DNA from: Bispira polyomma
Taxonomy: Eukaryota
Reading direction: 5' to 3'
NCBI GenBank assembly: GCA_965649765.1
Contig: OZ287751.1
Location: 96,038,001-96,102,000 of the forward strand
DNA: 64,000 nt
Part shown: positions 1,780 to 58,044 of the stretch, one piece after another
How the letters are laid out: the number at the start of each line of letters is the position of its first letter
How positions within the stretch are numbered: the first letter of the stretch is position 1
Made by a program: the position numbers and the translations under genes
The notes under the pieces: model-generated
What the model was told of the DNA's origin: nothing
Databases searched by the model: none
The model's input: only the letters and a program-made list of their open reading frames with translations

Positions 1780-1812
<33 letters not shown>

Positions 1813-20931: not shown

Positions 20932-21699
20932 TTATAACATGCAACATGAGGAGGATTTCTTTGGCTGATGCTGTGGCTCCTCATCATTTCTTGGTGTATT
21001 TGTTTTGTTGGTTTGTTCTTCTTTTTGTTTTTGAGATTTGTTATCAACAACTGGGGCTGCATCTTTTCCCTTCTTCTCTTCATTAACTTTTGTTCTGTTA
21101 GTTTGTTTATTCTTCTGTTGCTGGGATGCCTTTTCAACCACTGGGGCTGCCTCTTTTTCCTCCTCCTTCTCTTCATTCTTGACCACGCCAATAGTAGCTG
21201 TTTGATGTTTCTTTGTAACTTTTGCATTGTCTCCCTTTTTTGTAGGTTCAGAACGGTCTGCTATTTGTGGTATATGAGCCTGTAACTTTGCCTTTAGTTC
21301 TTCCAGCTGTGGGCAGTCCCAAGTATTTTGGATACTTACATCTGGACTATGGAAATTGATATACAGCAGTTGTGTAAAGACCATACTCATGGGACCCTCC
21401 GGGGGCCATGTCATCTTCTCCAGAAGAAGGGGTATAACTGGTTTCTTTAGAGCATCGGCCAGACTGACTTCTCTTCTACAATTAGCTGAAAATGTATACT
21501 TGGAAGTTACACAGGTCAGTACTACCTTGCAGCCACGAACTCCCTTATCTATCTTATCATACAGGGAATCTCCCCCACCCATTTGCAGGATATCTAACCA
21601 ACAGGTATAGCCTAACTGACTAAGTCTGTTGTAGAGGGCTTTAATCTGAGGCTGCTTGCCCCACTGGTAAGATATGAAGACATCAGGAGACTCTTCTTC
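20932..21699 (-). CDS. Terminal exon of copy A: second TIR domain, charged tail and CCaX motif
   Basis: [92 protein letters not shown]...KKSSSCCML*. Splice acceptor at 21700-21701. Confidence 0.92.
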   Translation of the reverse strand, partial: EEESPDVFISYQWGKQPQIKALYNRLSQLGYTCWLDILQMGGGDSLYDKIDKGVRGCKVVLTCVTSKYTFSANCRREVSLADALKKPVIPLLLEKMTWPPEGPMSMVFTQLLYINFHSPDVSIQNTWDCPQLEELKAKLQAHIPQIADRSEPTKKGDNAKVTKKHQTATIGVVKNEEKEEEKEAAPVVEKASQQQKNKQTNRTKVNEEKKGKDAAPVVDNKSQKQKEEQTNKTNTPRNDEEPQHQPKKSSSCCML

Positions 21700-24600
21700 C
21701 TACAAAACAATATGTGTCAACATGTAAGGAGATGATATTCGTTGATCAATTGCAGTTTATTATTGGTATAGAGTTACAGCAAGAAATAAAAATAACACAC
21801 ACTAACATCAGGCAAAACTGAATTAAACATCACTTACCTCTGTGTCAGTATTTCCTGCATTGACCACAGCTTTCCCACTGTCCTTCTCTTTGGGCTTAAA
21901 AATAATGATTTCAGCTGGTGGAGACATCCAGTTGACGTATGCTACAACAAACATTACAGTAATTTACATGCAACTTACATGTAAAGTTACAGTAACTCCA
22001 TCCCATTATTAAAATAACTGCCTAGCTTGTGCAATCTTTTCTTAAAAAAACACCACTATATATAAAGATTAGGATTTATCCTTAATCGACATTTAAGTTA
22101 AACATCAATCAATTGTATTGCATCATCAATTTTAACATGCCTTATTAATCCGCAGCATCAAGTGCAACAACAGAATCAATTGACCAATCAAGAGGTCCAA
22201 AAAAAAGGAATTAGGGTTTTTTGTCTAAACCCAGAAAATGCTTCTAGTATTCTAATTTCAACTGGGAGACTATTCCATAACATAGGGGAAGCAATTGAGA
22301 AGCTCTAGATCCAGCCCTCTTGGTAGGTTTTACAGAGGAACCAGAAAGACTCTTTACCCCCTCATGGTTTCTGAAAGAAAGTGGCGTAACAAGGTAGGGG
22401 GGCTGTTTAGAGGCCATATCTTTAAAAAATGGTTACATGGATTTTTTGAGGTATGGCAAAACACCAGTTTTACGTGAGATTTTTTTACCCAAAACAGAAG
22501 AGAATTGCAGTAGCTGAGGTGGCTACTTACAAGGGAGTTAGCCACAGTGATAGCAGCCTCTAATGATTTCTAATTCTTTTGATATTACAAATGTAATAGA
22601 TATAGGAGCGACAAATGTTGTTGATGTGTTGATCAAATGAGTAGTGAAGCCAATAGTGACAAAAAGGTTCTTGACATTATCAGAAGGTTGTAAATTGCCC
22701 AGTGGTGTAATGAGGTATAATGATCTAAGGGACTTGCTGGGTTTCCATGAAAATGATTTTAGTTTTTTTCAGGTTTAAATTTCAATTTGCAGTAATTGAT
22801 CCAAGACTGAAAAAAGACAGTAAGTAAACCTAAATGAGCAATTAATTATGTTAATAAGAGTTATAGGGATGTTCAGAAAATTCCATGAGAATAGTGTCAG
22901 GGATAGGATCCAGTTCAAAAGATTTATGAGTTTAAGAGCATCATTTCAGAAAGTGTGTGGAAATAGAGCAGATTAGAAACTGCGTAGCTTTGATGTCTAT
23001 ATGGGTTGTAACAAGCTCCAAAAAGTTTACATTTATCTAATATTAGTAAAATATGCCGCAGAAAACTCTGAAAACACTGCTGTCTGAGGGCGTTCTAAAG
23101 CTTGTATTACTGCATCTTTCTATTAAAATATGAAAATAGTAATGTTTTCTTGATTATAATTTGTCAATTTGTTAATTATCAAACGAAATGTATTATACCA
23201 TTAGATTTTCAAATAAATATACAACTTTAAAACTTGCAGTCAACAGAATACATTCATAGTTCTAAAGTACTACCTGCTATACTTACGGTTTTTGATGAGT
23301 TCCTCATTTGGTACCACATTATACCGTAGCTGCATCAGTAGCTCTTGCATCTTGGGCAGTGGCCAGTATCTATCATCCCCACTCTCTTCACCACCCCGAG
23401 TAAAGAACCGAATAAACAGGTACTCTCCAAAGATAGGGCCCATGGAACCTTTGGGTGGCCAAGGCATCTTCTCCATCAACAAAGGAATAATGGGTTTTCC
23501 AAGATTCACTGACAGATTGACCTATTATGTAATATACAAATCACAAGTTAAAATTTAATATAGCATACATTACACCCGTAATCCTCGAGTTGAACGATAA
23601 ATGGAGTAATGGAAATTTTTCGGTCTCCTACCTATAACTTGGACAACATCGCCCTGCTCATATGTTTTTGTGGTGTTTTGTAGTTCTGTAGACAATACCT
23701 GTAAACCTGTAGTTCATCATACGTTTGTATAGATGTATACTATCTGGTACTTTTTACAGAATAAAGGTTTATCATATAACAGCTCAGAAAGTTTAAGGAG
23801 TTACTTATTAGCTGGAATTACTCATAACAATTTACTTGTACTCAATTGTCCATAATAAAAACTTGGACTTGACCTTTAGCCTTTCATAGTTGTAAGTGAT
23901 ATTATATTAGAATCAGAGTAACTGATACCATAATTAATTAAAGCAAATTGATCAACTCTTAGGTTTCTAAATGCTCTAGCTTTCCAGTCCACCTTGAATA
24001 AGTAACAATCATCAGCACACTGTGATATAATCTACCATTTGGGTTGGGGAAAGCAGTACATACTTGTTGGTCAAGATTCAATACTAAAAATCACAAGGCA
24101 TTGGCAACTGACAACTTTCTGACATAAAGCCTCAACCAAGATTCCAACCGACGATTTCAGAGGTGGGAGGCGAATGGATGAACCAATACAGTGTCAGTGT
24201 TGGAATTATATATAAAACTTACATCATCAATGTAGTTAAACACAGAAACCATAGGATACCTAAAAAAGTAACAGTAAACGCAGCTGAAAAGACTTATGGA
24301 AATGCTTGAATAGTTTCTACCATAGCCATTATAAATTGTTCTCTTTCTGAATTAACAGATTCTTCAAACAAGCTTATTGATAAGCTTATTGATAAGGATT
24401 TTGGATGTACCTGATGTATCTGCTACATATGACACCATGACCTCCAGAACTTAAATATTCAATCACCAGAACTAATTCAATACTTTGCGCAGAATTAGAA
24501 TTACGACCTAACTAAAACGTAGCCTAAAAAATTAAACTTCAAACAATAAATGGTAGGCCGATTGCTGTAGAGAAGGATCCTTTTGGCCTGCCGGTCATAC

Positions 24601-27600
24601 TACATTTTAGGGCAAAGGAGACATCTGGCAACAGATCTGAACACAAAGGGGTATTTTCTGGGAGGGTCTCCTGTGGCTGGATATTATCTGCAACAAGAGC
24701 TAAAGGTTTTTTTCCGGAGGGTCTGATGTTGCTGGACAACATCTGCAACAATAGGGGTATTTTTCTGGAAGGTCCATTGTGGCTGGACAACATCTGCAAC
24801 AAGATGGGTATTTTTCTGGATGGTTTAATGTGGCTGGATAACATCTGAAACAAGAGAGGTATGATCTGACTCTAACTGGGTCAAGCTCGACCCCTATTAT
24901 GTTAACTTAAATATGTGAACTCAATTAGACAGAGCAGATAAGCAAGCAAGACAAGTAAACTATTGACATTTATTCACTGTGCACAAAATAATATTATTAA
25001 ATTACAAGACAATAAAGGGTGCACAAACTACAGCTAGTTAAAATCCATTTTTACGTTATACTAATTAATTCCTATCACCAATTATACTAAGATTCTACAA
25101 CAGTCCTAATACCTCAGAAGACTCTATTTTCTGCTAATAATTAAGAACCTATAATTATTATTATTATTATGCATTTTTGACGCGCTTTATTGATACTAGG
25201 CATCTTCTAAAGCTCAACAGCAGAATCAGTGATCCAATCATAAAGTCCATGGGCATAGCAAGGTTGTAAGGGTAAGGGGGTTAACAGCTGGTTAATCAGC
25301 AAGCAACCAGACTGGGTATTAACCCACCGCATAGCATCCTGCGGAAAAGGGCGCAACTTCCTTTCACGCTTCACATGGTGAAGGGTGCCATAACCAAAAT
25401 CTGTGAATATCTATTGGTAATTGACGGCTATGAGCAGCTAAATATTGTAATTATACAAAAAACAGGAGTAGGTTGAAACTACACATGTATTATAGGAGGT
25501 TACTGGCAGCTTTATATTGGCGGCTATATGGCTAGAAAATTTGCTCAGGTATATAGGAACTGGTTGGGACTGCTTTAGGCGGCTACTGATATCTATATTG
25601 GCGGCTATAGGCTGCTAATCCCTAAATATCTAGCTCTGGCTGTCTGTATTCAATTCTGAATACAAGAAATCACTGAGAAATCACTGGTTACCTTTCTTCA
25701 CTTTTCCTTTCTTCCTTGGTGGCTTCCTTGATATTAACTTTACAAATTTGTCTAACTTCTTTGAACTATATTTCTGTAAATGAACCACTAATCTTAAACA
25801 TGCACTTTAACATAAAAGGATAATTGATAATTGTCTTTTTAGAAATGTATGTATGTTGGTCGAAAAATGATCTTAAACATGACAAGATAATTCAATCTTA
25901 CATAGCTTCTCTGAAAGGGTATTTCTGTTGGTCAAACAATAGAATCCTATGAAACACTAAAAAATTTGATTGGAAAAGGCTTGTTGGTTAAATGATGCTT
26001 CAACAAATGCAGCTTTAGAAATTTTAAAATGACAGTTTTCAAAAATAAAAGGCCTTCAAGACTGCTTATTAATTCCTTTGGGATTGAGAGAAGCTAAACA
26101 ACGTTGGAATTATGATTTAAAAAAACAAAAAAACAGTTTAAACTGATAGATCATGGTGGGAAAATTCATTTTGATGGAACTAATCATTGGTTTGTCTGAA
26201 TAACACTGCCTAAAGAGGATAATATATACATTTTAGATTTAGCTGGATTTATTAACTTAACAGATTCAACTAAAATTCAAGTTTCAAAATTGTATTGTCA
26301 ACCACAGTACGATTATAAATTGATATTAATGTATGTTGTTTTTTGTAGCATAAATGTACATTGATAAAAACTTTTTGTGTGATGTAAAAAATATATATAT
26401 ATTCACTCAATTGTTTGCTTATCTCTTGTAGCTTCTATACATGGACCTTGTTATAGGGAGAACAGTGGTGTTTAAATGATCAAAAATCGGTTGATAAATA
26501 ACGATTTTAGGTAACTTATGGTGCAATCTTTGTTAAAGATATATATATATATATATATATTGGGCGATTTTTAGGCGATTTTTTTATCGATATATTATTG
26601 ATTATTTTACCCTTAAAATAAATAAAAGTATTAGAATATTTGTTTTATTAGGACAGAAGAGGATATTTATGTTTTATGTTTGATATTATTTCATACAAAA
26701 CTTAATGATGAATATGACGTCACCATCACCAAGATGGATATGTACGTCCACAGACAAATATTTCTTATTATTGTGCTCTATTATAGAATTAATGCTTAAT
26801 TTTATGAAATATACATGTGAGGATATAAAATTAAGCATGTGTTACAGTTTCTAATGTTCATACTGACATAAGGTATGTTATTTTGCTATATTTAACTCCA
26901 TTTGTGATGTAAACGGTATTATTGTTCAACTCGGAAACTGTTCAACTTGGGGAAGATGGGTGTAGTATTTAAAAAAAATAATACTGTAATGATTGGTGCT
27001 GCGAAACTATAAGTACATACATATGGTATACACCTGGTGTGGAGCACAACAAAACATCAGTAACCATGTGCATCAACATATTCTGTTCATATGTTGTATG
27101 TTGTATCCACACTTGCCTTGTCATGTTTAGTTTATATTGTTCAGGTCTGAAGCCACTCTAATACCAAAGAGTATTTTTGAAATTATAGGAAAAGCTTATA
27201 AACCAAAGGACTCTAGTACTGTTGCATATTTGAGCAGTGTTTTGCCAACAACCAGTAAAATATTTCCTCCAAAATTTGGATTTTTTCACTCAACTTTTTC
27301 ATCTTGCCAAATGTGGGCCTAGTTTTGCTGTCTGTGCTGTAGTAAGGTATCTGTAACTGTTTCATTTTCAGGTTTTCCAAATATAGAAATGTACAAAGGA
27401 TTACTTTACCTTCATTAGTTAATTTCAGTGTTAAAACTTTACCTCTCTGTTGCAATTTGGTGACTTAGCATACTTTTCAGACACACAGCAAATAATCACT
27501 TTGGCAGCACGGATACCTGTGTCTATCTTTTCAAAGAGTTTATCACCACCTCCCATCTGACCAATGTCTATCCACCTAGTGATGTTAAGCATACAAAAAC

Positions 27601-30600
27601 TGATATAAGTGGTAAAATATTAAGGTATATATTATTAAACATTAAATGGCAAAATTTTATTATATAATCAACTCTCATAAACAGGACTAAGAGCTGGTTT
27701 GGTGATTTCTTTATAGTGTCAAATAAATTAAATCTGGCTTACATGCTGCATTCATGCTACAGGCTAAATTTCTAAACTAACCCTTCAAAACCGGCCATTT
27801 CCAGGTGGTTTTTGAGCAGTTTTACTTCCTCCTGTAGACCCCACTGGTAACTGATGAACACTGGGGGAGGAGTGGCATACTCAACCTCCTCATCTTCTAC
27901 TACTTCTTCTGAAAGATCAAATAAGAAGACATTTTGGTTTTGCCAGCCACACAAAATAGTTATCTGCCACTTTAACATTTAGGTCTCAATCTTTACCAAC
28001 ATTGAATCACAAAATCTCTATAACTTTCAAAACATATCATACAGAACTTGTCACTATACCTCATATTTAAAGATGTTAATCTTTAACACCCCTTACCGGT
28101 TTGTTTCAGAGCATTTTCCACAATAACAAATGCATCCATTCTGTCCATTTCTTCTATATGTTTCAAAATGGCGTGTGTTGCTTCTCTTGTTTTGTTAGTT
28201 GCAAACCACTCATCAAACATGCTCAGGCATGGATTTGGCTGAGTTGCCCAGTTTCTGATGTCATCATTGCTGTAACCCAGTCTACTAGCCAGTAGACGCC
28301 AGTCGTGTTCGGTTTTTGGATTAAGAAGCTTTGAAACATCTCGTGACCAGATTGGGGCATGGCTTAGAGTCTAGATTGAAAGCAAGTATTGTAGTTTGGT
28401 AAATTATTTTTAATAATCAGATTACACTTGTAAAGCTCTACGAAAGGCATACAAATTTAACAAAAACTGAATCTTATTATTAGTTCAATACTTTAGGACT
28501 CATTGATAAAGACTAAAATGACTCAAACAAAGAATATTTGGTAATGAGAAAGTAGCAGATACAATGTAGATTTACTTCTTAAGAAATTACACTTAATTAT
28601 GATACATATCTTATTTTGACAAAATAAAATAACAACATAATATCCAAATTTTTTGCTTTTTCACCTTTTTGTCAATTTCTTCAACCTTTTCTATTGTCTC
28701 TTCAACTACATCTTCTAGTTCTTCCAGACGCTGGCCTTGATCATTTACCTCTCCAGACAAGGCCACTACTTCAGCTTTGGTGCAGTCCACCTCTTTCCCC
28801 AAGTTGGTCACATTTTCCTCTGTATTGGTAACTCGCTCATCCAGTTTTGTCACATCTTGTTGTACATCATCAACATCTTTGGCAACTGCTGCCAGACTAC
28901 AATACAGAATATAGACTCTGGGGACATATTATCAGAGTTAAATGTTCTATTCCACTTCAAGTTGAGACCTAACACAGTGTCTAATATTTCATAATCTCTA
29001 GTAGTTATCTATCCCACGTTTTAAATATCTGAATAAGTTTACTTTCGGTTTAATGTCAACACATCTTGACTTTGTCACATAGCGATGGTCAGTTCACTGG
29101 AGAAGGAAATCAGAGCAGGGTAGTAAGGTTTTCTTTTCTGCAGAAGCACTGGCTTTCAGCAATTCTGCTACCAATGTTCCCATATACATACCAGGGTAGA
29201 GATTCAACCTAGCTACAACTGCAGAGGTGTGTTACCACAATGCACCCTATATATTTCTCAACAACAAAGAATTATGTTATAGCCACCCTGAATGTTGGAC
29301 ATAACTAAATTGATGTGATAGATTGTGTTTAAGGAGAGTATTAGTTGAGAAATACAGGTTAATCTTTGAAGGTTACGGACTAAACCATCGGATAAAGGCA
29401 GGGTTAAATGGTCATAACTAAATTGGTGTGATATATTGTGTTCAAGGAAAGCTTTAAATTAGAAAGACAGTTCGAAGACAATACCTTCTTCCCGCAATGA
29501 CATCCAGGACTGCTGCAGCATGGTCTTTCAGCACTGTGTCATTTTTCAACTCTTCAAAAAATTCCTTATACTTGGCTAGTTCTTCCGGATATATCCCACC
29601 AATTGTCTTCATATTGTAAATCAAACCAATCATAAATGTTGAAGACTCACGGTTTCTAATGGCTTTCTTCAGGGCAGCTAGGTACTTGGTGGCTTTCTCC
29701 TGTGAATAAATTAATAAAATTACAAGAAATCGGGCAATCTCTGTAATACCTAATCAGCAATTCTACAGAAATTTACATTTAGGTCTTAATTTTACAAAAT
29801 AACCAGATGTAATAGTGGCGTAACTTTGACATCTAGAAAGGTTTCTTTAGAGTGTCTTTTGACTCTAAACCATTTTAGATAGAGAACACTTTTTATTATA
29901 AATTTTGATTGTAGTTATTTAGGTTGTTTGGGTGTAATGCTGCTCAATGTTTCAACACTTGCATCTTCTATCACAATGGACAATTTATTGGTAGAGGAAA
30001 TCAGTATTGATTAGTTGGTCAAAATTTCTGCTGCCAAATTTTCTACACGTGTGCCCAAGCCACTATCATATCTGCAGCATTTTGTCACAGTTCTGGCATT
30101 TTATTGCATTCATAGCATAAAAGTTTGGCTAGATTAAAACAATTCTCTGAGTTTTGCATCAACTGTTATATTTTCCATGTTTATCACGACCTATGGTAAT
30201 CCTGAAATATGGTTAGGCTACTTACTGCAGACTCCTCTGCCAGCTGCACCAATATACTCCCTCCCTGAGATGCCATATTTGCGACGGTCATCATGCAGTC
30301 AATGATTGTATCATCGTGAGGTAACAGCAATTTAGGACGTTTCTCAGAGAGTGGTGCAAGACTCATCACTGCGATGCCTGCAGTATGCTCCACTTTCACA
30401 GTGTCTATTATACGTTTCACACAGTTTGCTGTCATGGCCTGTATTATGTTTAAAATATAATTGCAGTAGTCAGTTAATGCTATAATCTAGTTTGTAACAT
30501 GATCAGTAAACATTTTAGAAGGACACCTGAAACTAGGGCCAATTTACAACAACACTACGAGACCCTTTTAGCAGCTAGAACTGGACAAAATCTGTTTACA

Positions 30601-33600
30601 AGCTCTATATCTTTGATACCTATATTTAGTTTGTATATAAATTCAAATTAAGGTCTCTTGAGATTCGCTGTAAATAATAATAATAATATAAGATATCAGA
30701 CTTTTTTAGCGCTTATTTTCGTTGAACAAATTATAGGGCGCAAAAAAACCACAGCCAGAGTCGAGAAACATAGGTGATAGACAGAAGAAAGTCGTCATCA
30801 ATGCATCCACGGAGAATGGGAAAGAGACTATGGAGGGAATGCATCATTGTGTACTTTGGACTTATATTTTGGAACAAGAAGTAATCTATTTTTGGGATAC
30901 AGTGAATTGCAGTAGTCCAGTCTGCTACCAACTAGAGCATTTGCTGCAGTTATTGCAACCGATTTTGGAAGGTACCTCCTGATTCTCCTAAGGTCTCTGA
31001 GACCTATGAAGCATGACTTACACATTGATTGGATATGACTGGAAAATGAAAAATCACTGTCAAACAAAACTCCCAGGTTCCTCACTTTATCAGTTGGGAA
31101 AAGCAGTGTCTCAAGAATGTTTACAGGAAAAGAATTTGACAGTTCAGCACGTTGTGTAAATATACTCGGTACACATATACTTTGTACTAAAATTTACTTA
31201 TATTCAAAATAAATCAAAAGCCTTGTACTCATAGCACATTATGACAACAAGAGTACTTACTGATGTAATATAAATTTCAATGAGTCAAACTTTTCCCAAA
31301 ATTTAATAATACATTGATTCATCAATATTTTAAACATTACTCTGAACAATGGTATATGAAAAGTATGTTTTCCAATAATATCTAAACTAACATCGCATTA
31401 AAACGAATTCATAATCTCTACCCTTGATTTGAAGGGCCAGTAAATCCCTCCTAAAAGTGTCTACATTATTTTAAGAATAGCAAATAAAATTCTAATTATT
31501 ACCAAAAAGTAAATAAAATATAGGAAAGTATGAACTTTACTGACAACAATACAGAAAATGGTCAAACTAACATCATATAGAAGTTACTGATCTTATTAGA
31601 ACTTGAAAGCTCTCAATTTCTAAACAGATTTTCAAAAATGACGCATCAATTAGTGAATATGTAAATACAACACAAATATAAAAACTGACTTTAAAATAAA
31701 AGACCAAGAGATTCCTTTCCAATACATTTAAAGATTTTTGCAAATCATGTTGACTATGCATTATTCTACAATATATTACAATACTTATTGTAATGATACA
31801 TAATTTATCCATATCGGTCCTGAAATAAGAATTTTACATAGACATCTATACACATCAATGAAAATGATATGAAGACATTTTTTGCCCATAACAACATGTT
31901 AGGGACACCCTGTAAAATACATGCAATATAAATTCTCGAGCCTCATCTTTCAGTTAGGGCAATCACTTGCTATCTTTAGTTAAGGCAATGACACCCACTG
32001 GTGGGCTGTATTAGGGAAGTCAAGAAAAAGTTCATTAGGCTAAGCACTTTTGATCAAAGGTAGGTAAATTTATATATAATATCATACAATTGACCTCTTG
32101 AGGTTTGGCCTAAAGAGATCAACTGTATTTGTACCTCAGGATGTTCCATACAGACTGTCTTGAAGAAAGAAACAGTACTTGATATAGTCCGGTTGGCTGC
32201 CCCTTCCATGTTCTCAGCTATGGCATCTAGATGGGGGTGAAACCTCTCTGGACTGTTCTTGTACATGGATTCAAAGTTTCCTGCAAAAAGGGCCATACTA
32301 TACTCAAACATGTGGCAGCTTTTCATGCATTTTAGGGTAACAAAAGAACCATGTCTGTATTCCACTCATAAACCCACACTGAAAGTCAGACTTCACTCAA
32401 CTTTAGACTATTTAGAGAAACCTAAGAATCGGCTTAGAAGTGGCTACATGACCTCTTATATTGTAATGGACAGCCCCCACTCTAAAAAGAGAGGGCACTA
32501 GAGAAAATTTCAGGGTATTTATTTTTTGTAGCCCTAAAGCCAATTTCTCTGATCTCATGCTGTTCTAAAATCACAGAGTGCTCTTCAAACATGTTCTAAA
32601 CTGTAACTGGAAGTTGCTACGTATAGTAATAACCATATCAGTTAGTGTCTCTTTCTTCAAGTACTCACTAATAAGGGAGGGTTCCTCTCCACTCAACACT
32701 CTCTGAATCAGTTTGTCCGTGGTGTCAACACTAAGTTCTGCCACCAGATTACCAGGCATCATGGTCATAAGGTTGTTAGCATCTCTCCTCAGAATTTCTT
32801 CATCACATTCCCAAAGTTCTTCACAAGCTTTAAACACAGGTTCAATGATTTCTTTGGTTTGCCTGTGCTAAAATATAAATTAAAAAAATGCAGGATGTAT
32901 ATATGTACTCAATGAAACTGAAGTGACAGTTAGTTCAGTTCAACAAGTACAGAGGTACAGTGTAAAATACCTGAAAAATGTTTCTTTAAATTTTATAATA
33001 CCAACTGTAGAAGGTACAGCATAAAGTGAGGACAGATAATGTAAACCTACAGAGATTGTGTATCACCTAATAGGATTTTAAATAACAGTACAGTAGGTTG
33101 GAAAACAGACTATATTATTTTAGTATTCATAACAATTTTGCTGGTGTATATTAAAATAATTATGAAAGATAGGTTATTCATTTCCTTAATAAAGTTAGTA
33201 ATACATGTATTAACATAGAGAAAGGTAAGAATGGGTCCTTTTCAGTTGGTATATTACCAGTTGTATTAACATACTATGTGTTTGTTATATTATTTATCAT
33301 ATGTGTTTTTCTTCAATTTCTTTCAAAAGTAAAACATTTCCATTTTAAGTACAGTCAGAAGTGTGAGGTATACCTCAAAACAATACCCCAAGTCTTAATC
33401 TTTGTTTTGGGGAAAAAAAACAAAAATTAATGGTATAGTTTTATTGGCATTCAGGAACATAATAGAACAATGCCAGAATTAAATAACAGTATTAAGGTGT
33501 TGTCTGCGAATTGTAAAGGTTTGAGAACACTTAATATGCGAGTAGATGTTTAGAACTATTTAAAAAAGCTGGTGCCACTATTGTATGTTTACACACATAA

Positions 33601-34900
33601 CTGAAAATAATGATGATATTTAGATTTACAGTAGATAGCAATCAAACATAAAAACTTCAATGAGACACATTGTAATTAAAAAAGGTTGAGATATAACAGG
33701 AAATATTCTAGAATTACAGTGAATAAAGTGACTAATTAATTCATTTTCTTGATTATTTGTTTTCTTTTAGCTACATGTTTGTAACAAAGCAGTGACTGGT
33801 AATGTTTGTTGGTGTTGAGTTTGCCTTGTTCAGGAGTTAAAGCATGTTTATGAAAACACAGCTTTGGCATTACAGGTAGAAGAATCAGATAGCTGAGGTG
33901 TTGTGGTGTGCATTCTACTGCCTGTTAAAAACATACCGTGCATAGATAATTTTCCAGGCACTCCTTCAGCCAGCGGTAGATAACTGTTCGTTCTTTTGAA
34001 TCATCTTCATCAATCCATTCCTGATCTTTGGCCCAATTAAATATCTTAGCAATGTGATCTTTGTACTTGACTGCTTGCTTTTTGTTGTTCCTAAAATCTC
34101 AAATATTTAAAAAATGTGCATTAGTGGGTGAATAAGTTATCTTGATAAACAGTTATTAAACTATAAGACAACATTAAAATGTATATTAAGAAACAGGTTG
34201 TATCAAAAGAGTGTGATTGAATGTAACATAAATTCTGATATGACAGGTTAGTATTATCAAGTTTGTTGCTGTGTATGCCATAAAGATATAACTATTCTTG
34301 AATGAAAAGTTCAAGGAGCTATTTAAATAATTTAAAAACAATAAAAAGCATATCACTAACTATTGAAAACAAATGTTTTCATCTGATTATATTTAACTTA
34401 AAAAGGTGACTGATTTGTTGCTCATTGCTCTTAAATCATGTGAAACTAGACTTTCTTGACTTGACTTGACTTTGTAAAGAGTTACTGGTGCTGAGAAAAG
34501 TTTCTATTTGGACAGAGAGGACTGGCTCAATTCACATAGTGGAATTTTAATAACTTTGTGAATGGTAGATAAGGATAAAATACAAAGACTCTAGAGTCAG
34601 TCTGTGTTAAAATGACTATATAAAGGATTATTATTATTATTTTTTTAAATTTAAAAAAACAGTTTATTCTCCCTATTAAATCATTTATCAGAGACCCTGT
34701 GCCGAGGGAAGAGGTTGCAACCCGCTCACAGGGACTTCACAAAAAACTGCACCTCACAGGGTGACATCACAGAAAAATTATGATAAACATATTTAACATA
34801 CATGTATAATCAATTGTATATATAAGCCTGACATAATACATCCACATGATTTTACCAATATATAAAAATATATTACAAAGTACATATGTGTGTATTACTG

Positions 34901-34936
<36 letters not shown>

Positions 34937-37900
34937 TAGATAGATAGATATGTAAAAAAGTGGCCAAATGTTTTTTTTGTTGATAATTCTGAAAGTTTAC
35001 ACATGCTTTATTGTGAAAATATTACATATTTTGTCTTTGTATACATTTAACAACACAATACTTTTTCTATCTTCTAAAACTAGTTTAAATACATTGGTAT
35101 AAAACAGTAAGTATTTTATGATATTTTGTTTAATATTAATTTCACTATAGTTTGTTTTTTAAATACTACATTTCATCCATTGACTGTAAATAGTGTACAT
35201 TACAATAACTATTATAATGTTACCTACTATCAGGGATTATGTGCTGTAATGCTATAAGTAATAATATTTTACCACTGGTCAGTATATACTTAGTAGTATC
35301 TATTTGTGTCTGAGTTTAGTTTCAGTTTAACAGCGTTTTCCACAGGTCTTATGTCATATCACGACAGGCAGTTGATTACTGCAGGCATCAAAGCAAGATA
35401 GATTGTCAATGCTTTTTACTGCCAACTTCCCCACATACGTGTCAGGCCAGACATTAGAACCCATGACTGCAGTGGGGGAGGCACATGTGTTACCATTACA
35501 CCATCAGAGCCCCTTTAAACATTGAAAACATTAACATCTAAACACCTTTGTAAGAGTATATAGTGTATGCTGTAGAAGGCCATTTCAATATTCGGACCTT
35601 TTCAAAACGGCAACCTGGGACCATTTCAACCTCAATGATTTTAATGTCGAAATATAATAGGAGTCATAGGTAAGCCTATACCCAAGCTTTATATCCCTGA
35701 CATAATGCAATAGTTGTACATTAATTAAATATTTGACTAATTTGTTGCTCTTTAGTCTACTTTATAAAGCCCTTATACAACAATGCATGCACAGGTCTAG
35801 TGAGTTTTAAGCTTAATTAGTTCATCATCAGCTGGGTGTCCACCCTGAATAGAGTGATATTTACAAAAAACGGCCCCCTGGTGTCGATTTCTGGACACAC
35901 AGAAGACAGACAAGCAGAAGAGTATTCGATTGTAATTGTAAAAGTAAAAATATTTACTACCAATTACTTCTAGCTTTTTGCAGCTAATGAGTTGGAATAG
36001 TAAAAAATAAGTCCAAGTTAAAGTTTAAATTGTCAAAATGGCCTATAATGCACATTAATCTTAGTGAACTACTCAGAAATTGTAAAATGTCTTTCGCAGT
36101 ATTACTCACATGCAATCTCCATATATAAAGAAAAATGCGCTGTTAATAAAACGTGAGGTTCTATCACCAGATTTCATTTCTGGCCTTTGTTTCATCACCT
36201 CAAATGACTTGTCCATGAATTCCAAAGCCCACTCTGTATTTTGCTGCAATTAACCACAGAAGAACAACAATAATATTACATGGTTAGTTTACAATAGGAA
36301 AATTGCCTGAGTGATGCATATTTTAAAATTTGGTCACGAGAAGACAAATCAATACCATCTCATATAGACTCGGCTGATAAGGTTTGTCTTCTCAAGCGAT
36401 ATAATTTTAGTGCTTCTTTTTACAAAACAGAGAGCTACGAAATGCCAGAATTAAATGGCTGCAATCTATGTTACGTTCATACTAAACTAAAATCTGTGGT
36501 ATCTATATATTTGATCAGAGCAAGTATTCCATGTTTTAATTTCCGCATTTAAAAATCCTCGACCCAAATTCTGTTTAACCCTCAGATTCAATTTGCTTTA
36601 GCAATACTCAGCCTGGGTCAGTTCTGTATCTTGTCCTAGGATAACACCCCCAAGTAGTAAACTGCATATCATCATCACTAAATACGAATGAACTATCAAA
36701 CTCTTGCAGCACTTTATTTCTATACAAGTAAAGTCTAAAGTGTCATGAAATGAGAAAGGTTTGAGTGCATCATAAACCCTTAACATTGCAAAAACTCCAA
36801 AACACAATACAAGATATACCTAAGGATAGACTTGGGGGTAGAAGAAGCTTTGTAATATTAGAAGGCTTTGAGCTTGGTTCTAATAGTACAAAAAGAATGT
36901 TGAATTATTCTACATATCACTGGAAATATTATCATCAGCATTCTGATGTGTACATGTCTAATATACAATGCATTGACATAGATTACCCCCCAAGGCAGAT
37001 ATCTTGTGACATCATAAGTAGCATCTTGCAGTGGACTCTGTGGATGTTCAAATGCAGTCACCAGCATTGTGTGTAGTTTATCTAGCATTTTCTCAAAAAG
37101 CTGATTTACCCTGTAATTGATAAATAATTGAACTAATTACATCCGCCAAGAAGGTTGGTTGGTTAAGGGCTTGTGCATGGGCCAAGGATAAGATGATCAA
37201 AACTTTGGTGGAGCGCTTAGTTCAGCCAAAGCAGTACAGGGCCAAAAGGTGACAATACATTCCTCAAGAAAAAAACTACTGAACCAAATTTATCGGAGTT
37301 TGTGGAGGGCTAGGATATGTTCCCAAAAAGAAACCATAACGTTTTATTGTAATGCATGCCTCTGCCAAGGCATAACAGCGCCAAAAAGTAAAGAAAATTT
37401 GACTCTGAGGTGACTTGGCGAAAGCACTTTAATGGTTTCTTGCTTGGATCATGTCCTAGCCCTCTACAAAGTTTGTGTTAAGTACCACATGTCAGAAGGC
37501 AATACCTGCAATTCATTGGTACACGTTGATACTGTCCATATTGTAAATATTGGTTTAATACACTTTACTTAATGGATATAATCATAAAATCCTACATCTT
37601 TCTCTTTAATCGTCCTTATAGCATACTGAATTCTTTTAAGGATGATACTGCCACTGAATTTGTTAAATTTATTTGTCAGAAATTTAAATTTTGTGACTGT
37701 TTGACCAACTTTTGTCTTGGAATGTAGAAATATTACAGTGAATGAACCAGTTGTATGTGTTGTTTTAAGGGCTTACCTAAGGATATCAACGACTTTGTTC
37801 AATAAATGATTAAAGTTTAAGTTTGCCTTTGGGACAGGTTCTTTGCCATGTTCTGTTATACTGTCAATAATCTCACCCAACAATGCTTCATGTTGCTGTA

Positions 37901-40900
37901 AAACAAGATAACATACTTCTCTACTATACCTGCACTAAACAAAGAAGTACGTAATATCAACAAAAAGAATGACACAACACAGATATTGTGACTAAAAGCT
38001 ACAAAAACTGAAAAAAATGCATAAAAATATCAAATAGACTAAAATAATTGATGAAATATGCCCAAAGTGGCTGTCTCACTATCCCAATAATAGCTCCCGA
38101 CCGTCCCAATTGTACAATCGGGAGAACAATCGTATCGATCGGGATCAATCGTAAGCTGCTAAAAAGTTATCTTAACCTTATAGCGACCTATCTTTCCGAT
38201 CGACATCGAAATCGGGAGAAAAAAAATAGCTATTTTAATTGTTCAATCCCGAAAAAACCCCGACTGTAAAGATAAGTCATTACCAAGTTCCCGATTGTAA
38301 AGATAACCCGGGAGGAGCGGCCGATAAGTCATTATGAAGTCCCGACTGTAAAGATAGGCGTCAATTGTAAGCTGTTAAAGAGTTATTTTAACCTTATAAT
38401 GACCTATCTTTTCTATGGGCATCTAAATCGGGAGTAAAATTTGCCATTTTGAAAAAGATTAATCGTCCAATCCCTCCCGATAGGTTGGGAACACCCGTCA
38501 GATTGGTCGGGAGCATTACGAGTTATCATCTACTTTTCCCGAGTTATCCTGTCAAAAGGATAGGTCTTTAGAAATGCCCAGAGTGTACCCAGCGATACCT
38601 CGGACAGTGAGGTGAAGGCCTTCAATAGGAAACCGAAGAAGGGGAAGATAAGGACATAGGTCTCTGTAAACAGCTGAAACCTTCTTCCAGTCCTCTGGGG
38701 TGGTGGGGCAGCAGAGAAATTGGCAGCGAGGTACTGGCCTATTAGGGATGAGAATGACCTATCGGGGAAGACAACGACCTATCTTTATGATCGTAACATG
38801 TTGTCCTCACTTATCTTTGTCAATCGGGAGGATTCTTTTGGGCAAAATTCCCGATCTGTCCCGATCTATTAGTCCTTGCTCCGGACCTTTCTTTACAATC
38901 GGGAACCATTATGATTATAGTTTTGGGACGTAAAATTTCCCGCCCTTTTTTCCAAAATCGTGGCAAAATGCTTAAGATTGCTCTCGACCGCATTATCAGG
39001 GTCTCCTCCCGATTGGTCGGGATAGTGTGAGAGCAGCTTAAATGAAAAGAAAGAAGTAAACTAGTATTACTAATATATGTCACAGCACTGCTATTTTTTA
39101 TATCAATGAGTCCTCATATAAAATAATCTAAAAAGAGATAATACCAAACCTGTTGAGGACACTATCTTTAAAATAGACTACATTTCTACACTTTAATTGC
39201 AAGTGAGTACTCTATTTTCAAAGAGGTTACACTTATTTACGTCATAACAGATATATATATGCACATTAAATAACTGTTGTAATTTAAATTTGGCACCCCA
39301 CAAATTAAACTCGATTTCCAAAGAGTGAAGACTGATGTGGACATTAACCTATACACACAGACTTAAAACCCTTGGTAGATATGTCATAATGTAGAATAAT
39401 TAAAAAAGACAGTTTTTTAATGCAGATAGGTTTATTAAACTTATGGTCAGAATTATACATATTTTTTGATATTTTCTGCTTTTTACAACAGAATGAATTG
39501 GGTGGAATTTAAAACGTTATGAGGAATAACAATGTTAATAGCACTAATAATACACAGTGTGTAAAAATGTTCTTGGAGGGCTTAGATAAACATTGTATAT
39601 ATTAACAGGAAGATTTACGAAGTACCAGTTCATTCTATACCGACTTGGATATGTTAAAGTTAGTATATCAGTAATTTTTTTATAAAGTCTATATTCCCAT
39701 TTGATCAAACTTCAGTATCCACTAAAGACATTGATTTAAGACTTTTATATTCTGAATGACAAAATGAGTAAAACTTTGTTAAAATTGAAAGAAAAGATAT
39801 TAAATGACACAGATTTTACTGGATATATTTGGCATATTGATAAGTTTTACCTTCCATTTATATATCTTCCTGGTATCCACTATGGCAACAGCGAAAAACA
39901 CTATGTTTGGAGTTCCATTTCTAATGCAGGTAAACAGGATGACCTTGAGTTCTTCTATGTCAGCCTCACTGAAATGAAAACACAAACATAGTGTTTTAGT
40001 CTCAGCCAGTTAGACTCTTTGAAACAATATTATCAGCCAATCAAATTGGTTTAGAGAAATAGTTATGATTTTCTTGTGAATACCATCCTTTATCTTCCAT
40101 CACAACAGCAATATAACAGTTATATATGGGTTAAATGCGGCTAATAATATAACAGATATATAGGGGTTAAATAAGGCTAATAGAGTTAGATATATAACAG
40201 ATATACATTGGTTAAATATGGCTAATAATATTACAGATATACATTAGTTAAATGAGGCTAATAATATAACAGATATACATGGGTTAATGAGGCTAATAAT
40301 ATAAGATATATATGGGTTAATGAGGCTAACAGAACCAGATCTAGAGACATGGAGCATAAAATGTGCACTTGACTTCACATTCATATTTACTTGGTTTGCC
40401 TTATATGTTTTTACCTATGTCTGTGAGTCGGTTTATTGGTTTGTCACCAAGAATACACATCTATTTATAAAACCAATTTAGATGAAATTAGGTGAACAGA
40501 TGGGTCATTGGCTAAGGAAGAATCCATTACATTGTGGAGTGGATGCAGGGAGAAGGGCCGATTCAGGATTTCTTTTTACCATGTTGGGGACTGTAGAGCC
40601 TTGGTTGAGGTATGTACTCTACTGAGTACTCTTCCAGTGTAACATGTTGGGGACTGTGGGGTTTGGTAGAGGTATGTACTCTACCGAGTGCTCTACTAGT
40701 TTAACATGTTGGGGACTGTGAGGCTTTGGTGGAGGTATGTACTCTACCGAGTGCTCCACTAGTTTAACATGTTGGGGACTGTGGGGGCATTAGTGAAGGT
40801 ATGTTTTTTACTGAGTACCTGACTAGTTTAACATGTTGGGGACTGTGAGGCCTTGGTAGAGGTATGTACTCTACCGAGTGCTCTACTAGTTTAACATGTT

Positions 40901-43900: not shown

Positions 43901-45202
43901 AGAAAACCCATACCAGTTTGTGTATAAAACAGGTAATTCGACTGAAACAGCTCTTCTGTCTATAAAAAATGAAGTTCACCATCTTTGTCACGAGGCAAAC
44001 CTACTGCCCTGGTATTGCTCCACCTCTCTGCTGCCTTTGACACCATTGATCATTCCACTCTTCTCAGTTGTCTTCAGACTTGGTTTGGAGTTAGGGGCTC
44101 TGTTCTCAAATGGTTCACTTCCTACTTAACTGATTGTTATCAGTCGATAAAAATTGGCTCTACTTTGTCCGATCTTTGTAAACTCTTCTTTAATGTTCCT
44201 CAACGTTCTGTTTTGGGCCCTCTGTTGTTCTCATTATACATAGCCCCTTTCAGATTGGTGATCGGCAAATACAAAGGTATTAAGTTTCATTTTTATGCAG
44301 ATGATACCCAAATTCACTTTTCAGGAGTCTCTCAAAGTTGAAATTACATAAATTACAATGCATTCAAAATAGTGCAGCTAGAACACCAGTCGATACACCA
44401 GTATAACTCCTGTTCTCCTGAAATTGCATTGGCTTCCTGTTGAACAGCGTACAGTGTTTAAAACAGCTACACTTGTTTATAAGTTTCTTCACACTGGGTT
44501 TCCAAGGTATTTTGCCCCATATCTTTCTACTTACAGTAGTTCCTACAATACCAGACGCAGTTAGAGTGGTAGTAATTTCCTTGTCGTTCAAAAGCTCCAC
44601 CCATCTACTCAAAAGTCACAGTTTAGTCACAGCTTTGCTTTTGATGCTCCCATTGTTTGGAATGCTCTTCCTGATGTGTTTCGTGCTTCCCCCCACTAGC
44701 CTCTTTTAGAAAGCAGCTTAAAACCCACTTATACATCAAAGCATACCCACCTTAGTCTCAATCATTTCCCGGGGCAGTCTGTGGTGCTCGAACGTTTTCT
44801 GTCCCTTGATATTGGAAATTGGATTACTGTCTTTTTTTTACACCAATAATTCAAGGGAAAATTAACACATTGTAAAATTCCAAAATAATATCGCTAGATT
44901 ATAGAAGATTGACCCATCTTGTTAAACTACTGTCAATATATAGACATTTTACCATAATTAAAGACCCACAATCCTGGCAAAAAGGGACACAAGGATATTA
45001 ACTTGAAAAAATAATTAATTTGGCAAGTAAATTGAATACATGTCATTATTGTAGCAACACATTGTAATAGCCCTCACCTTCCCTTCTTCAGTGCTTCTTT
45101 AAATTTGTCCAGGTGATTATCCTTAAATTGTTTACAAATGCCGTAAGCCCTAATATCAACAACCTCATTGATGGCCTCCAAATATTCAGCAAACTGACCC
45201 AT
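20932..45202 (-). CDS. Copy A (complete, 17 exons, ~1139 aa): HEAT/ARM-like helical region - coiled coil - Death domain - TIR - TIR - CCaX protein
   Basis: Exons assembled by hand, all with GT..AG boundaries and matching phases: 45078-45202, 39851-39968, 37777-37895, 36987-37110, 36110-36243, 33937-34090, 32669-32867, 32135-32280, 30226-30438, 29485-29699, 28665-28896, 28097-28370, 27782-27908, 27443-27575, 23287-23521, 21838-21941, 20932-21699. They sum to 3420 nt of open frame, from MGQFAEYLEAINEVVD to KKSSSCCML*. Twelve of the 17 exons have matching exons in copies B or C, ten of them identical in length. A further upstream exon cannot be excluded. Confidence 0.88.
22200..22900 (-). mobile_element. 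L2-group LINE fragment
   Basis: ANSLVSSHLSYCNSLL, a VKNLFV/FDQHINNICR-like segment and an LWNSLP-like segment. Confidence 0.65.
23287..27908 (-). CDS. First TIR (TIR_2-type) domain of copy A, split over exons 13-15
   Basis: VFISYQWG...[63 protein letters not shown] contains box 1 FISY, WxD, the BB-loop GD, SxNCxxE and KPIIP motifs. Confidence 0.9.
23573..26962. mobile_element. TA-flanked TIR element (Tc1/mariner-type target site) with nested LINE pieces, in intron 14 of copy A
   Basis: Left end ta|CACCCGTAATCCTCGAGTTGAAC; right end reverse complement ta|CACCCATCTTCCCCAAGTTGAAC. The paralogous intron of copy C lacks it (985 bp vs 3.9 kb). Confidence 0.6.
24623..24862. repeat. 51-bp tandem repeat x ~4-5
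   Basis: ATCTG(C/A)AACA at 24741, 24792 and 24843. Reads as 17-aa repeats (LLQMLSSHxxPSRKIP) in ORF 24539-24853. Confidence 0.8.
28097..28370 (-). CDS. Death-domain exon (exon 12) of copy A
   Basis: Translates as [91 protein letters not shown]. It shows Death-fold hallmarks: DWRxLAxxLG, P...hhxxW and MxRxDA. It is absent from the ORF track. Confidence 0.85.
28665..28896 (-). CDS. Coiled-coil exon (exon 11) of copy A
   Basis: [78 protein letters not shown] forms 11 continuous heptads with Val/Leu at position a. The paralogous exon is 61763-61994. Confidence 0.85.
30675..31155 (-). mobile_element. L2-group LINE fragment
   Basis: ORF 30828-31085 reads RNLGVLFDSDFSFSSHI...LRRIRRYL...ANALVGSRLDYCNSL, with an AT-rich tail near 30675-30690. 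Confidence 0.8.
35300..35513 (-). mobile_element. tRNA-derived SINE
   Basis: Minus-strand head GGGGCTCTGATGGTGTAATGGTAACAC...GGGTTCTAATGTC has an A-box and a degenerate B-box, with a short repetitive tail near 35305-35325. It does not form a full cloverleaf. Confidence 0.5.
38070..39037. mobile_element. Non-autonomous TIR element (MITE) in intron 2 of copy A
   Basis: Imperfect TIRs: GCTGTCTCACTATCCC on the left and GCTGCTCTCACACTATCCC as the right reverse complement. Many internal ATCGGGA/TCCCGAT motifs and no coding capacity. Confidence 0.65.
40110..40335. repeat. Minisatellite, ~38-bp unit x ~6
   Basis: Repeats of AATATAACAGATATACATGGGTTAAATGAGGCTAAT with variants. Confidence 0.85.
40580..41516. 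repeat. Minisatellite, ~63-bp unit x ~15, with a 316-bp (5-unit) higher-order repeat
   Basis: Unit approximately CATGTTGGGGACTGTGAGGCCTTGGTAGAGGTATGTACTCTACCGAGTGCTCTACTAGTTTAA. The variant ACTCTACCGAGTGCTCCACT recurs at 40741, 41057 and 41373. Confidence 0.95.
41905..42525. repeat. Degenerate ~140-bp tandem repeat x ~4
   Basis: CTTTTACATTGATTTTGTCTTATTTTGCTGTTCTATATTGT recurs at ~41970, 42114, 42306 and 42484 (last copy variant). Confidence 0.8.
42960..44760 (+). mobile_element. 5'-truncated L2/CR1-group LINE ORF2 in intron 1 of copy A, antisense to the gene
   Basis: KSCMLDPW, FKTAVVTPLIKK, NYRPVSGLSFISKLVE and STETALL; a frameshift near 43985; LSAAFDTIDH, SVLGPLLFSLY and YADDTQI; an internal deletion; then IQNSAAR and LHWLPVEQR. 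Confidence 0.9.
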
Positions 45203-52558: not shown

Positions 52559-52568
52559 CTGTTAACTT

Positions 52569-54089: not shown

Positions 54090-54320
54090 TGTTTTCCACT
54101 GGCTTATGTTTAGTTGAGAGTGTAGAGAAATGAAATGCGTGCATCTAAAAAATTAGGTTGACCAAATTGCTTAACTGCTGTATGCAGTGCTATCGGACAT
54201 TCTATATGCGATTGTACATTTTCTTTATTTGGCAATAACGGTTCAGTCAATGGCACAAAGCCGAATGAGAAATCAGATTGTTCCTGCCATCTGGCAAAAC
54301 TTTTACAATCAGATTGAATT

Positions 54321-57276: not shown

Positions 57277-58044
57277 TCATAACATGCAACATGAGGAGGA
57301 TTTCTTTGGCTGATGCTGTGGCTCCTCATCATTTCTTGGTGTATTAACTTTTGTTTTTATGGCTTGTTCTTCCTTTTGTTGCTGAGATGCGTTATTAACC
57401 ACTGGGGCGACATCTTGTCCCTTCTTCACTTCATTAACTTTTGTTCTGTTGGTTTGTGCTGCCTTTTGTGGTTGAGATTTGTTATCAACCATGGGGGCTG
57501 CTTTTCCCTTTTTCTCTTTATTCTTGCCCACACTAGTAGTAGCTGTTTGATGTTTCTTTGCAGCTTCTGCACTTTCTCCCCTCATTATAGGTTTAGAACA
57601 GTCTTCTATTTGTGGTATATAAGCATGTATCTTTGCCTTTAGTTTGTCCAGCTGCGGGCAGTCCCAAGTATTTTGGATACTAACATCTGGACTATGGAAA
57701 TTGATATAAAGCAGTTGTGTAAATACCATACTCATGGGACCTTCCGGGGGCCATGTCATCTTCTCTAGAAGAAGAGGTATTACTGGTTTCTTTAGAGCAT
57801 CAGCCAGACTGACTTCTCTTCTACAATTAGCTGACATGGCATACTTGGAAGTTACACAGGTCAGTACTACCTTGCAGCCACGGACTCCTTTATCTATCTT
57901 ATCATACAGGGAATCTCCCCCTCCCATTTGCAGGATATCTAACCAGCAGGTATAGCCTAACTGACTAAGTCTGTTGTAGAGGGCTTTGATCTGAGGCTGC
58001 TTTCCCCACTGGTAAGATATGAAGATATCAGGAGATTCTTCATC
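57277..58044 (-). CDS. Terminal exon of copy C: second TIR domain, charged tail and CCaX motif
   Basis: Same 768-nt exon as in copy A. The TIR is nearly identical, the tail is diverged, and it ends in KKSSSCCML*. Confidence 0.92.
   Translation of the reverse strand, partial: DEESPDIFISYQWGKQPQIKALYNRLSQLGYTCWLDILQMGGGDSLYDKIDKGVRGCKVVLTCVTSKYAMSANCRREVSLADALKKPVIPLLLEKMTWPPEGPMSMVFTQLLYINFHSPDVSIQNTWDCPQLDKLKAKIHAYIPQIEDCSKPIMRGESAEAAKKHQTATTSVGKNKEKKGKAAPMVDNKSQPQKAAQTNRTKVNEVKKGQDVAPVVNNASQQQKEEQAIKTKVNTPRNDEEPQHQPKKSSSCCML

What the first reader, a model, noticed from the sequence alone, without database searches (positions are those of the whole stretch)
20932..45202. Candidate undescribed innate-immune system: a lipid-anchored HEAT-like / coiled-coil / Death / TIR / TIR protein
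Seen in the sequence: 17 phase-compatible exons give a 1139-aa protein with a helical region (aa ~1-515), a coiled coil (~516-593), a Death domain (~594-684), TIR1 (~700-815), TIR2 (~890-1000), a charged tail and CCML-stop. Established: MyD88 is Death-TIR; SARM1 is ARM-SAM-SAM-TIR, where the ARM domain senses and autoinhibits, SAM oligomerises and TIR cleaves NAD+; TRAM is held at membranes by myristoylation. Inference: this protein joins SARM1-like logic (helical sensor, oligomeriser, enzymatic TIR) to a MyD88-like Death-TIR core, a second TIR and a C-terminal membrane anchor. That would make it a self-contained, membrane-tethered sensor/adaptor/executioner. I know of no characterised protein with this combination, though uncharacterised homologues may exist in invertebrate proteomes.
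Basis: partly seen in the sequence, partly recalled or inferred. Interest (0 to 1): 0.92.

Follow-up and report, generated by a model that had tools for sequence, protein, structure and literature searches.

The report
Invertebrate HEAT-Death-TIR-TIR membrane-anchored protein
This is a real gene, one of nine neighbouring copies, from an old invertebrate family already labelled 'MyD88-like'; its conserved features suggest an untested membrane-tethered NAD+-cutting signalling enzyme rather than an ordinary MyD88 adaptor.

Summary
The gene model holds: 17 GT-AG exons on the minus strand give 1139 aa (HEAT solenoid, coiled coil, Death, TIR_2, TIR_2, charged tail, CCML). Two neighbouring paralogues have the same 17 exons; nine copies lie within about 500 kb. 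It is not undescribed. Full-length homologues occur in annelids, molluscs, rotifers, echinoderms, hemichordates and amphioxus. Sea-urchin members are deposited as 'MyD88-like protein L1/L2', and the Aplysia member is published as MyD88-like with an Armadillo fold. The label misleads: the TIRs lack MyD88's RDxxPG box and best match enzymatic TIRs (Cat1, AbTir, SARM1). The catalytic Glu is kept in every covered TIR2 and 92% of TIR1s; CaaX ends 69 of 73 full-length members. The solenoid diverges faster among paralogues (dN/dS 0.25-0.42 versus 0.05-0.17), but positive selection is not shown. Best reading: a prenylated, clustering-activated TIR NAD+ enzyme/scaffold (about 45%); a non-enzymatic MyD88 regulator is the main rival. 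No RNA of this species was available, and no enzyme test of the family was found. Other first-reader notes cover this same stretch; the scan holds none on this family from other DNA.

The parts
45078..45202 (-). Exon 1 (ATG; aa 1-41, solenoid)
39851..39968 (-). Exon 2 (aa 42-81, solenoid)
37777..37895 (-). Exon 3 (aa 82-120, solenoid)
36987..37110 (-). Exon 4 (aa 121-162, solenoid)
36110..36243 (-). Exon 5 (aa 163-206, solenoid)
33937..34090 (-). Exon 6 (aa 207-258, solenoid)
32669..32867 (-). Exon 7 (aa 259-324, HEAT repeats)
32135..32280 (-). Exon 8 (aa 325-373, HEAT repeats)
30226..30438 (-). Exon 9 (aa 374-444, HEAT repeats)
29485..29699 (-). Exon 10 (aa 445-515, end of the solenoid)
28665..28896 (-). 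Exon 11: coiled coil (aa 516-593), Val/Leu-rich a/d core
28097..28370 (-). Exon 12: Death domain (aa 594-684)
   Evidence: Pfam PF00531 E 5e-11
27782..27908 (-). Exon 13: acidic linker and start of TIR1 (aa 685-726)
27443..27575 (-). Exon 14: TIR1 core with the BB loop; catalytic-position Glu771 is the last codon (27443-27445)
23287..23521 (-). Exon 15: rest of TIR1 (aa 772-849)
21838..21941 (-). Exon 16: linker between TIR1 and TIR2 (aa 850-884)
20932..21699 (-). Exon 17: TIR2 (about 21268-21690; Glu961 at 21469-21471), Lys/Glu-rich tail, stop
   Evidence: Pfam TIR_2 E 1e-22; model pLDDT 92.5
20935..20946 (-). C-terminal CCML: CaaX/CCaX prenylation motif
   Evidence: sequence; CaaX in all 9 paralogues and in 69 of 73 full-length homologues
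57277..63235 (-). Upstream tandem paralogue, exons 10-17 (exons 1-9 lie beyond the window); 76% identical, ends in CCML
882..9152 (-). Downstream tandem paralogue, exons 1-4 (the rest lies before the window); 83% identical

Best explanation
A member of an old bilaterian invertebrate family (HEAT solenoid, coiled coil, Death, TIR, TIR, CaaX), expanded here to nine tandem copies; membership is about 97% certain. Most likely working, step by step. (1) The CaaX ending in Leu is geranylgeranylated, perhaps also palmitoylated on the second Cys, and hangs the protein by a long flexible charged tail from the cytosolic face of a membrane (motif shown, modification inferred). (2) The coiled coil pre-assembles small oligomers; its beta-branched a/d core suggests trimers (inferred). 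(3) The variable HEAT solenoid binds a protein cue and holds the TIRs apart until then (inferred, by analogy with SARM1). (4) On triggering, Death-domain contacts cluster the molecules, the tandem TIRs stack, and TIR2, with TIR1 in most lineages, cleaves NAD+ through the alpha-C glutamate to make cADPR-type messengers or drain NAD+ (Glu conservation shown, activity inferred). (5) The likely setting is innate defence or stress signalling. The confidence given is for this mechanism.
For: The TIR2 profile ranks enzymatic TIRs first (Cat1 3e-8, AbTir, SPARTA, SARM1 6e-5); MyD88 is absent from the 43 hits at E up to 1. Foldseek's top hits are SARM1 and SPARTA. Glu961 is present in all 136 homologues that cover it; Glu771 in 92%, lost (E to Q, with the S-x-N-C motif eroded) in ten sequences, mostly one divergent clade, that keep TIR2 intact. 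TIRs with the same SYQW and N/S-C-x-x-E pattern were active in Hurieva et al. 2026 (10.64898/2026.04.20.719644, Table S4): coelacanth H2ZXV5 depleted NAD+ and herring A0A6P8EVF3 made cADPR, so lack of SARM1's Trp does not bar activity. Cys sits at position -4 in 76 of 84 long homologues and in at most 7 at any other offset. Death and TIRs are under strong purifying selection while the solenoid is looser. Tandem expansion to 9 copies.
Against: No member was found in that preprint's table of tested TIRs, and only 12 of 61 Glu-bearing animal TIRs were active there. Look-alikes such as lancelet A0A8J9W3M3 and Phallusia A0A6F9DHT8 were inactive. Structure alone does not separate the classes: by Z-score Hydra TRR-2 (17.6), IL-1RAcPb, IL-18Rbeta, MyD88 (15.9) and SARM1 (15.8) are near-tied. 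The SARM1 ARM domain is not among the top 50 solenoid matches. Solenoid dN/dS stays below 1, and its dS is also higher in some pairs. There are no expression or immune-challenge data for this species.
Confidence: 0.45

Rival explanations
1. Non-enzymatic membrane scaffold that modulates, probably dampens, TLR-MyD88-IRAK/TRAF6 signalling through Death and TIR contacts; the Glu is structural or vestigial.
For: Death plus TIR is the adaptor combination, and authors file these proteins as MyD88-like. The Death domain is nearly frozen among paralogues (dN/dS 0-0.13), which fits a fixed partner. Amphioxus bbtTIRC binds MyD88 and suppresses TRAF6 ubiquitination (PMC6043800); from memory it has a Death and two TIR domains and may belong to this family (not checked). 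Most Glu-bearing animal TIRs were silent in E. coli.
Against: No RDxxPG Box 2, the motif shared by TLR, IL-1R, TIRAP and MyD88 TIRs (PMC7075850). Active-site residues (S, Y, D, E) are nearly invariant across phyla. The Death domain is closer to p75NTR and UNC5 than to MyD88.
Confidence: 0.3
2. A non-immune signalling protein (neuronal degeneration, growth or developmental control), working like SARM1 in axons or like Melted/VEPH1 at the membrane.
For: The three best Atlas fold matches of the solenoid are VEPH1/Melted clusters (TM 0.51-0.55). The Death domain resembles p75NTR and UNC5. From memory, Chou et al. 2023 found the sea-urchin ARM-bearing genes weakly responsive to Vibrio (paper not held).
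Against: Lineage-specific tandem expansion with fast-changing, mosaic N-termini is typical of defence genes rather than developmental regulators. An importin-5-like cluster scores a higher TM by query (0.63), so the VEPH1 link is only a lead.
Confidence: 0.17
3. The N-terminal exons belong to a separate gene or the model is mis-spliced.
For: No RNA of this species; exons 1 and 3-5 are individually insignificant against the family profile, exon 2 only marginal.
Against: The same 17 exons recur in three paralogues; there is a colinear 5e-61 profile match over aa 5-512; 73 homologues hold the whole architecture; one is an unbroken ORF.
Confidence: 0.02

Closest known systems
Strongylocentrotus purpuratus MyD88-like proteins L1 and L2 (UZG77129.1, UZG77126.1; probably Chou et al. 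2023, doi 10.1016/j.dci.2022.104580, not held)
   Same: Same family: L1 is colinear over aa 25-1139 at 34%; Death plus two TIR_2 by Pfam; C-terminal CaaX; identities solenoid 19%, coiled coil 45%, Death 55%, TIR1 52%, TIR2 65%.
   Different: Different phylum (the window gene groups weakly with annelid sequences, SH-aLRT 82); nine tandem copies here; CCML with a second Cys.
Aplysia LOC101858605, 'MyD88-like with Armadillo-type fold' (PMC9334734)
   Same: A homologue (aa 311-1058, 35%); the paper notes ARM, Death and TIR.
   Different: The passages read do not mention the second TIR, the catalytic Glu or the CaaX; that model is a long branch and lacks CaaX.
SARM1 / TIR-1
   Same: Helical solenoid, oligomeriser and TIR_2-class TIR with the alpha-C Glu; top Foldseek hit for TIR2.
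   Different: No SAM domains; coiled coil plus Death instead; two TIRs; C-terminal prenyl motif; Asn where SARM1 has Trp638; the solenoid is not specifically SARM1-like.
Canonical MyD88
   Same: Death domain directly before a TIR.
   Different: Box 2 RDxxPG replaced by DIxQMGGGD; TIR profile does not retrieve MyD88; extra solenoid, coiled coil, second TIR and CaaX.
ecTIR-DC families (Gerdol et al. 2017) and amphioxus bbtTIRC (Peng et al. 2015)
   Same: Invertebrate-wide TIR proteins described as absent from vertebrates; this family probably falls among them.
   Different: Neither paper is held, so identity could not be checked.
VEPH1 / Melted
   Same: Best predicted-structure neighbours of the solenoid (TM 0.51-0.55); also membrane-targeted (own knowledge).
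   Different: PH domain instead of Death-TIR-TIR-CaaX; sequence homology not tested.

Membership tests
Invertebrate ARM/HEAT-Death-TIR-TIR 'MyD88-like' family (SpMyD88-L1/L2) | N-terminal ARM/HEAT solenoid homologous to that of the family | tested here: met
   Profile of homologues' N-termini matches aa 5-512, E 5e-61; solenoid fold
Invertebrate ARM/HEAT-Death-TIR-TIR 'MyD88-like' family (SpMyD88-L1/L2) | Death domain followed by two TIR_2 domains | tested here: met
Invertebrate ARM/HEAT-Death-TIR-TIR 'MyD88-like' family (SpMyD88-L1/L2) | Full-length colinear homology and nesting within the family tree | tested here: met
   (quick tree)
Invertebrate ARM/HEAT-Death-TIR-TIR 'MyD88-like' family (SpMyD88-L1/L2) | One transcript joining solenoid and TIRs in this species | not testable with these tools
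   No RNA run; one unbroken ORF in a holothurian contig
Canonical MyD88 | Box 2 RDxxPG in the BB loop | tested here: not met
   DIxQMGGGD in both TIRs against the motif in PMC7075850
Canonical MyD88 | TIR and Death domains closest to MyD88's | tested here: not met
   MyD88 absent from the TIR2 profile hits; Death best hit p75NTR 1.5e-5, MyD88 0.12
Canonical MyD88 | Box 3 FW at the start of helix E | tested here: inconclusive
   TIR1 has [FY]W before its last helix (family consensus); register not verified
SARM1 | Tandem SAM domains | tested here: not met
   No SAM hit in any exon or in full-length homologues
SARM1 | ARM domain with the NMN/NAD+ allosteric site | tested here: inconclusive
   SARM1 not among the top 50 matches of a homologue's solenoid; site residues not mapped
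Enzymatic (NAD+-cleaving) TIR domains | Catalytic Glu on helix alpha-C | tested here: met
   E771 and E961; aligns with the Glu of Cat1; conserved
Enzymatic (NAD+-cleaving) TIR domains | Trp four residues before the Glu (SARM1 W638) | tested here: not met
   Asn in 90% of TIR1s and 98% of TIR2s; an active coelacanth TIR also has Asn there, so the Trp is not obligatory
Enzymatic (NAD+-cleaving) TIR domains | Measured NAD+ turnover | not testable with these tools
   No member found in the assayed set of the 2026 preprint
CaaX-prenylated proteins | Cys at position -4 with aliphatic residues, conserved | tested here: met
ecTIR-DC / bbtTIRC | Identity with the published reference sequences | not testable with these tools
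   Papers not held

The most novel reading that the evidence does not exclude
The family is an unrecognised class of single-chain animal immune receptors, the animal counterpart of plant TIR-NLRs. A paralogue-diversified HEAT sensor, possibly derived from Melted/VEPH1, controls a prenylated tandem-TIR enzyme that makes an NAD+-derived signal or kills the cell, with sensors swapped between tandem copies.
Probability: 0.2. Interest if true: 0.8.

Novelty: new member of a known kind. Interest (0 to 1): 0.4.

Why it matters
Whether animals use TIR enzymes other than SARM1 for immune signalling is an open question, sharpened by the 2026 preprint showing cADPR production by animal TIRs. This family is bilaterian-wide among invertebrates and is filed as an adaptor. 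Yet it keeps an invariant catalytic Glu, a membrane-anchor motif that I found mentioned in no held paper, and a natural E-to-Q loss in TIR1 of one clade. That makes it a well-defined candidate for cheap tests. If the TIRs are inert, it is one more expanded invertebrate TIR adaptor.

Tried and rejected
The joined 1139-aa model was not sent to any search or folding tool: searches went exon by exon by reference, and homologues stood in for the solenoid fold. The joined model was built only inside scripts from window.fa and compared there with fetched proteins. RNA check: only DNA-like runs were found; the joints seen were paralogue or repeat artefacts, not splice junctions. Exon 10 against the 1.84-billion library gave mostly single-exon fragments plus two repeat proteins with biased matches. 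N-myristoylation was rejected as a family trait: Gly2 occurs in only 4 of 57 long homologues. No transmembrane helix (highest 19-residue hydropathy 1.46). Positive selection on the solenoid was not shown (pairwise dN/dS below 1). A hit first taken for a SARM1 orthologue (P0217) proved to carry a related SYQW-type TIR, so it was not used to map SARM1 residues. TIR sequences in the preprint's table were compared by eye on short motifs only and were not typed into tools. Chou 2023, Gerdol 2017 and Peng 2015 are not held. The tree is the quick IQ-TREE run.
Full report
Observation. The gene lies on the minus strand. Rebuilding it from window.fa gave 17 exons from 45202 to 20932, all introns GT-AG and phase-compatible, and a 1139-aa frame ending in CCML. 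Searched exon by exon, Pfam found Death in exon 12 (E 5e-11), TIR_2 across exons 13-14 and in exon 17 (1e-22), and only coiled-coil families in exon 11. Exons 1-10 had no significant Pfam hit. The joined model was never submitted to a search or folding tool; it was used only in local scripts. No RNA run of the species was available: the three runs found cover introns like exons. Splicing therefore rests on comparison.

The comparison is strong. The genome holds nine copies in tandem on contig C4 between 95.81 and 96.31 Mb. The two flanking copies, both partly in the window, have the same 17 exons, GT-AG at matching places, and open frames 76% and 83% identical. All nine end in a CaaX motif and keep the TIR2 Glu.

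What it is. Stepping up through longer homologues gave full-length relatives in annelids, molluscs, rotifers, echinoderms, hemichordates and amphioxus, and shorter pieces in a bryozoan and a flatworm. No named vertebrate, insect, nematode or cnidarian protein appeared among the listed hits, which is not proof of absence. Of 84 homologues of 950 aa or more, 73 carry the solenoid and two TIRs, and 69 of those end in CaaX. One, from a holothurian, is an unbroken 1185-aa ORF on a 6.9-kb contig, most likely a transcript. Two sea-urchin members are deposited as 'MyD88-like protein L1' and 'L2'; L1 aligns over aa 25-1139 at 34% and has the same Pfam layout. They probably come from Chou et al. 2023 (cited in PMC10210618; paper not held). 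The Aplysia homologue LOC101858605 is described in PMC9334734 as MyD88-like with an Armadillo-type fold. A quick tree roughly follows the animal phyla and puts the window gene weakly with annelid sequences.

Anatomy. The Capitella homologue's N-terminus folds as a helical solenoid (pLDDT 86.5), and the window protein matches the underlying profile over aa 5-512 at E 5e-61. Solved matches are generic ARM/HEAT proteins, and SARM1 is not among the top 50 structural matches. In the Atlas the first three rows are VEPH1/Melted clusters (TM 0.51-0.55), with an importin-5-like cluster at 0.63, so that link is a lead only. The coiled coil has a Val/Leu-rich a/d core. The Death domain is nearer p75NTR and UNC5 than MyD88. 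The two TIRs are close duplicates of each other. They lack the RDxxPG Box 2 that defines MyD88, TIRAP, TLR and IL-1R TIRs (PMC7075850). Their profile retrieves Cat1, AbTir, SPARTA and SARM1 but not MyD88. Foldseek ranks SARM1 and SPARTA first, whereas Z-scores are near-tied across TIR classes.

Catalytic site. The alpha-C Glu is present in both TIRs (E771, E961). Across 137 homologues E961 is kept wherever covered. E771 is kept in 92% and replaced by Gln, with its helix motif eroded, in ten sequences, mostly one divergent clade, that keep TIR2 intact. Asn stands where SARM1 has Trp638. Hurieva et al. 2026 (10.64898/2026.04.20.719644) assayed 154 TIRs: 12 of 61 animal ones were active. None carries this family's QMGGG loop. 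Among look-alikes with SYQW and N/S-C-x-x-E, coelacanth H2ZXV5 depleted NAD+ and herring A0A6P8EVF3 made cADPR, while lancelet A0A8J9W3M3 and Phallusia A0A6F9DHT8 were silent. Activity is thus plausible, not shown.

Evolution of the copies. Among four paralogues, pairwise dN/dS is 0.25-0.42 in the solenoid and 0.05-0.17 in Death plus TIRs. Synonymous distance is also far higher in the solenoid for some pairs (1.16 against 0.18 for the copy at 95.93-95.98 Mb). That copy's detectable exons among 2-8 are 33-56% identical and its exons 9-15 are 86-100% identical. This points to homogenisation of the 3' half or exchange of 5' blocks. It fits a variable sensor on a fixed effector but does not show positive selection.

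How it most likely works. Shown: architecture, conserved CaaX, conserved catalytic Glu, constrained Death and TIRs, variable solenoid, tandem expansion. Inferred: prenylation tethers the protein to a membrane by a flexible tail; coiled coil and Death domain cluster it; a cue bound by the solenoid releases the tandem TIRs, which cleave NAD+ (0.45). Rivals: a non-enzymatic regulator of TLR-MyD88 signalling like amphioxus bbtTIRC (0.30; PMC6043800; that bbtTIRC belongs to this family is from memory and unchecked), a non-immune role (0.17), or a mis-joined model (0.02).

Verdict. This is a new member, in a nine-copy array, of a family that has been named and noted but barely studied. What I did not find in the held literature is the family-wide CaaX motif, the enzyme-type TIRs and the possible VEPH1 link. 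Interest 0.4.

Noticed in passing
G000:C4:95843758-95875929 (L016-L019); also hits at C5:2.48 Mb and C1:95.2 Mb: Copies with solenoid and Death exons; in the C4 copy (coiled coil too) no TIR exon was found before the next gene. Possibly TIR-less decoys, paired sensors or broken copies.
   Followed up: partly
G000:C4:95930718-95975041 (L020-L025): Mosaic paralogue: divergent 5' solenoid exons joined to a 3' half nearly identical to the window gene.
   Followed up: partly
P0369 (spider Stegodyphus dumicola, 1285 aa): Neuralized-Roc/COR-Death-TIR-CaaX protein sharing the Death-TIR-CaaX module; the module appears under a different N-terminal region.
   Followed up: partly
G000:C3:50165597-50166464: Matches the solenoid profile (E 6e-7) with no Death or TIR hit nearby in the searches; could be this genome's melted/VEPH1 gene.
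   Followed up: no
L032:10001-13474 (P0344) and P0308-P0310: Intronless divergent clade from metagenome contigs of an unidentified eukaryote; the related proteins checked (P0308-P0310) have lost the TIR1 catalytic Glu and kept that of TIR2.
   Followed up: partly
window 51612-55630, minus strand: Likely DIRS-like retroelement between two paralogues (RVT_1, RNase H-like and integrase SAM-like hits).
   Followed up: partly
window 42750-44341, plus strand: Frameshifted reverse-transcriptase fragment, probably non-LTR, in intron 1, antisense to the gene; a high-copy repeat also lies at about 30700-31130.
   Followed up: partly
window 40575-41516: About 63-bp-unit minisatellite in intron 1.
   Followed up: no
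window 3292-3594, plus strand: Harbinger-type DDE_Tnp_4 transposase remnant in an intron of the downstream paralogue.
   Followed up: no
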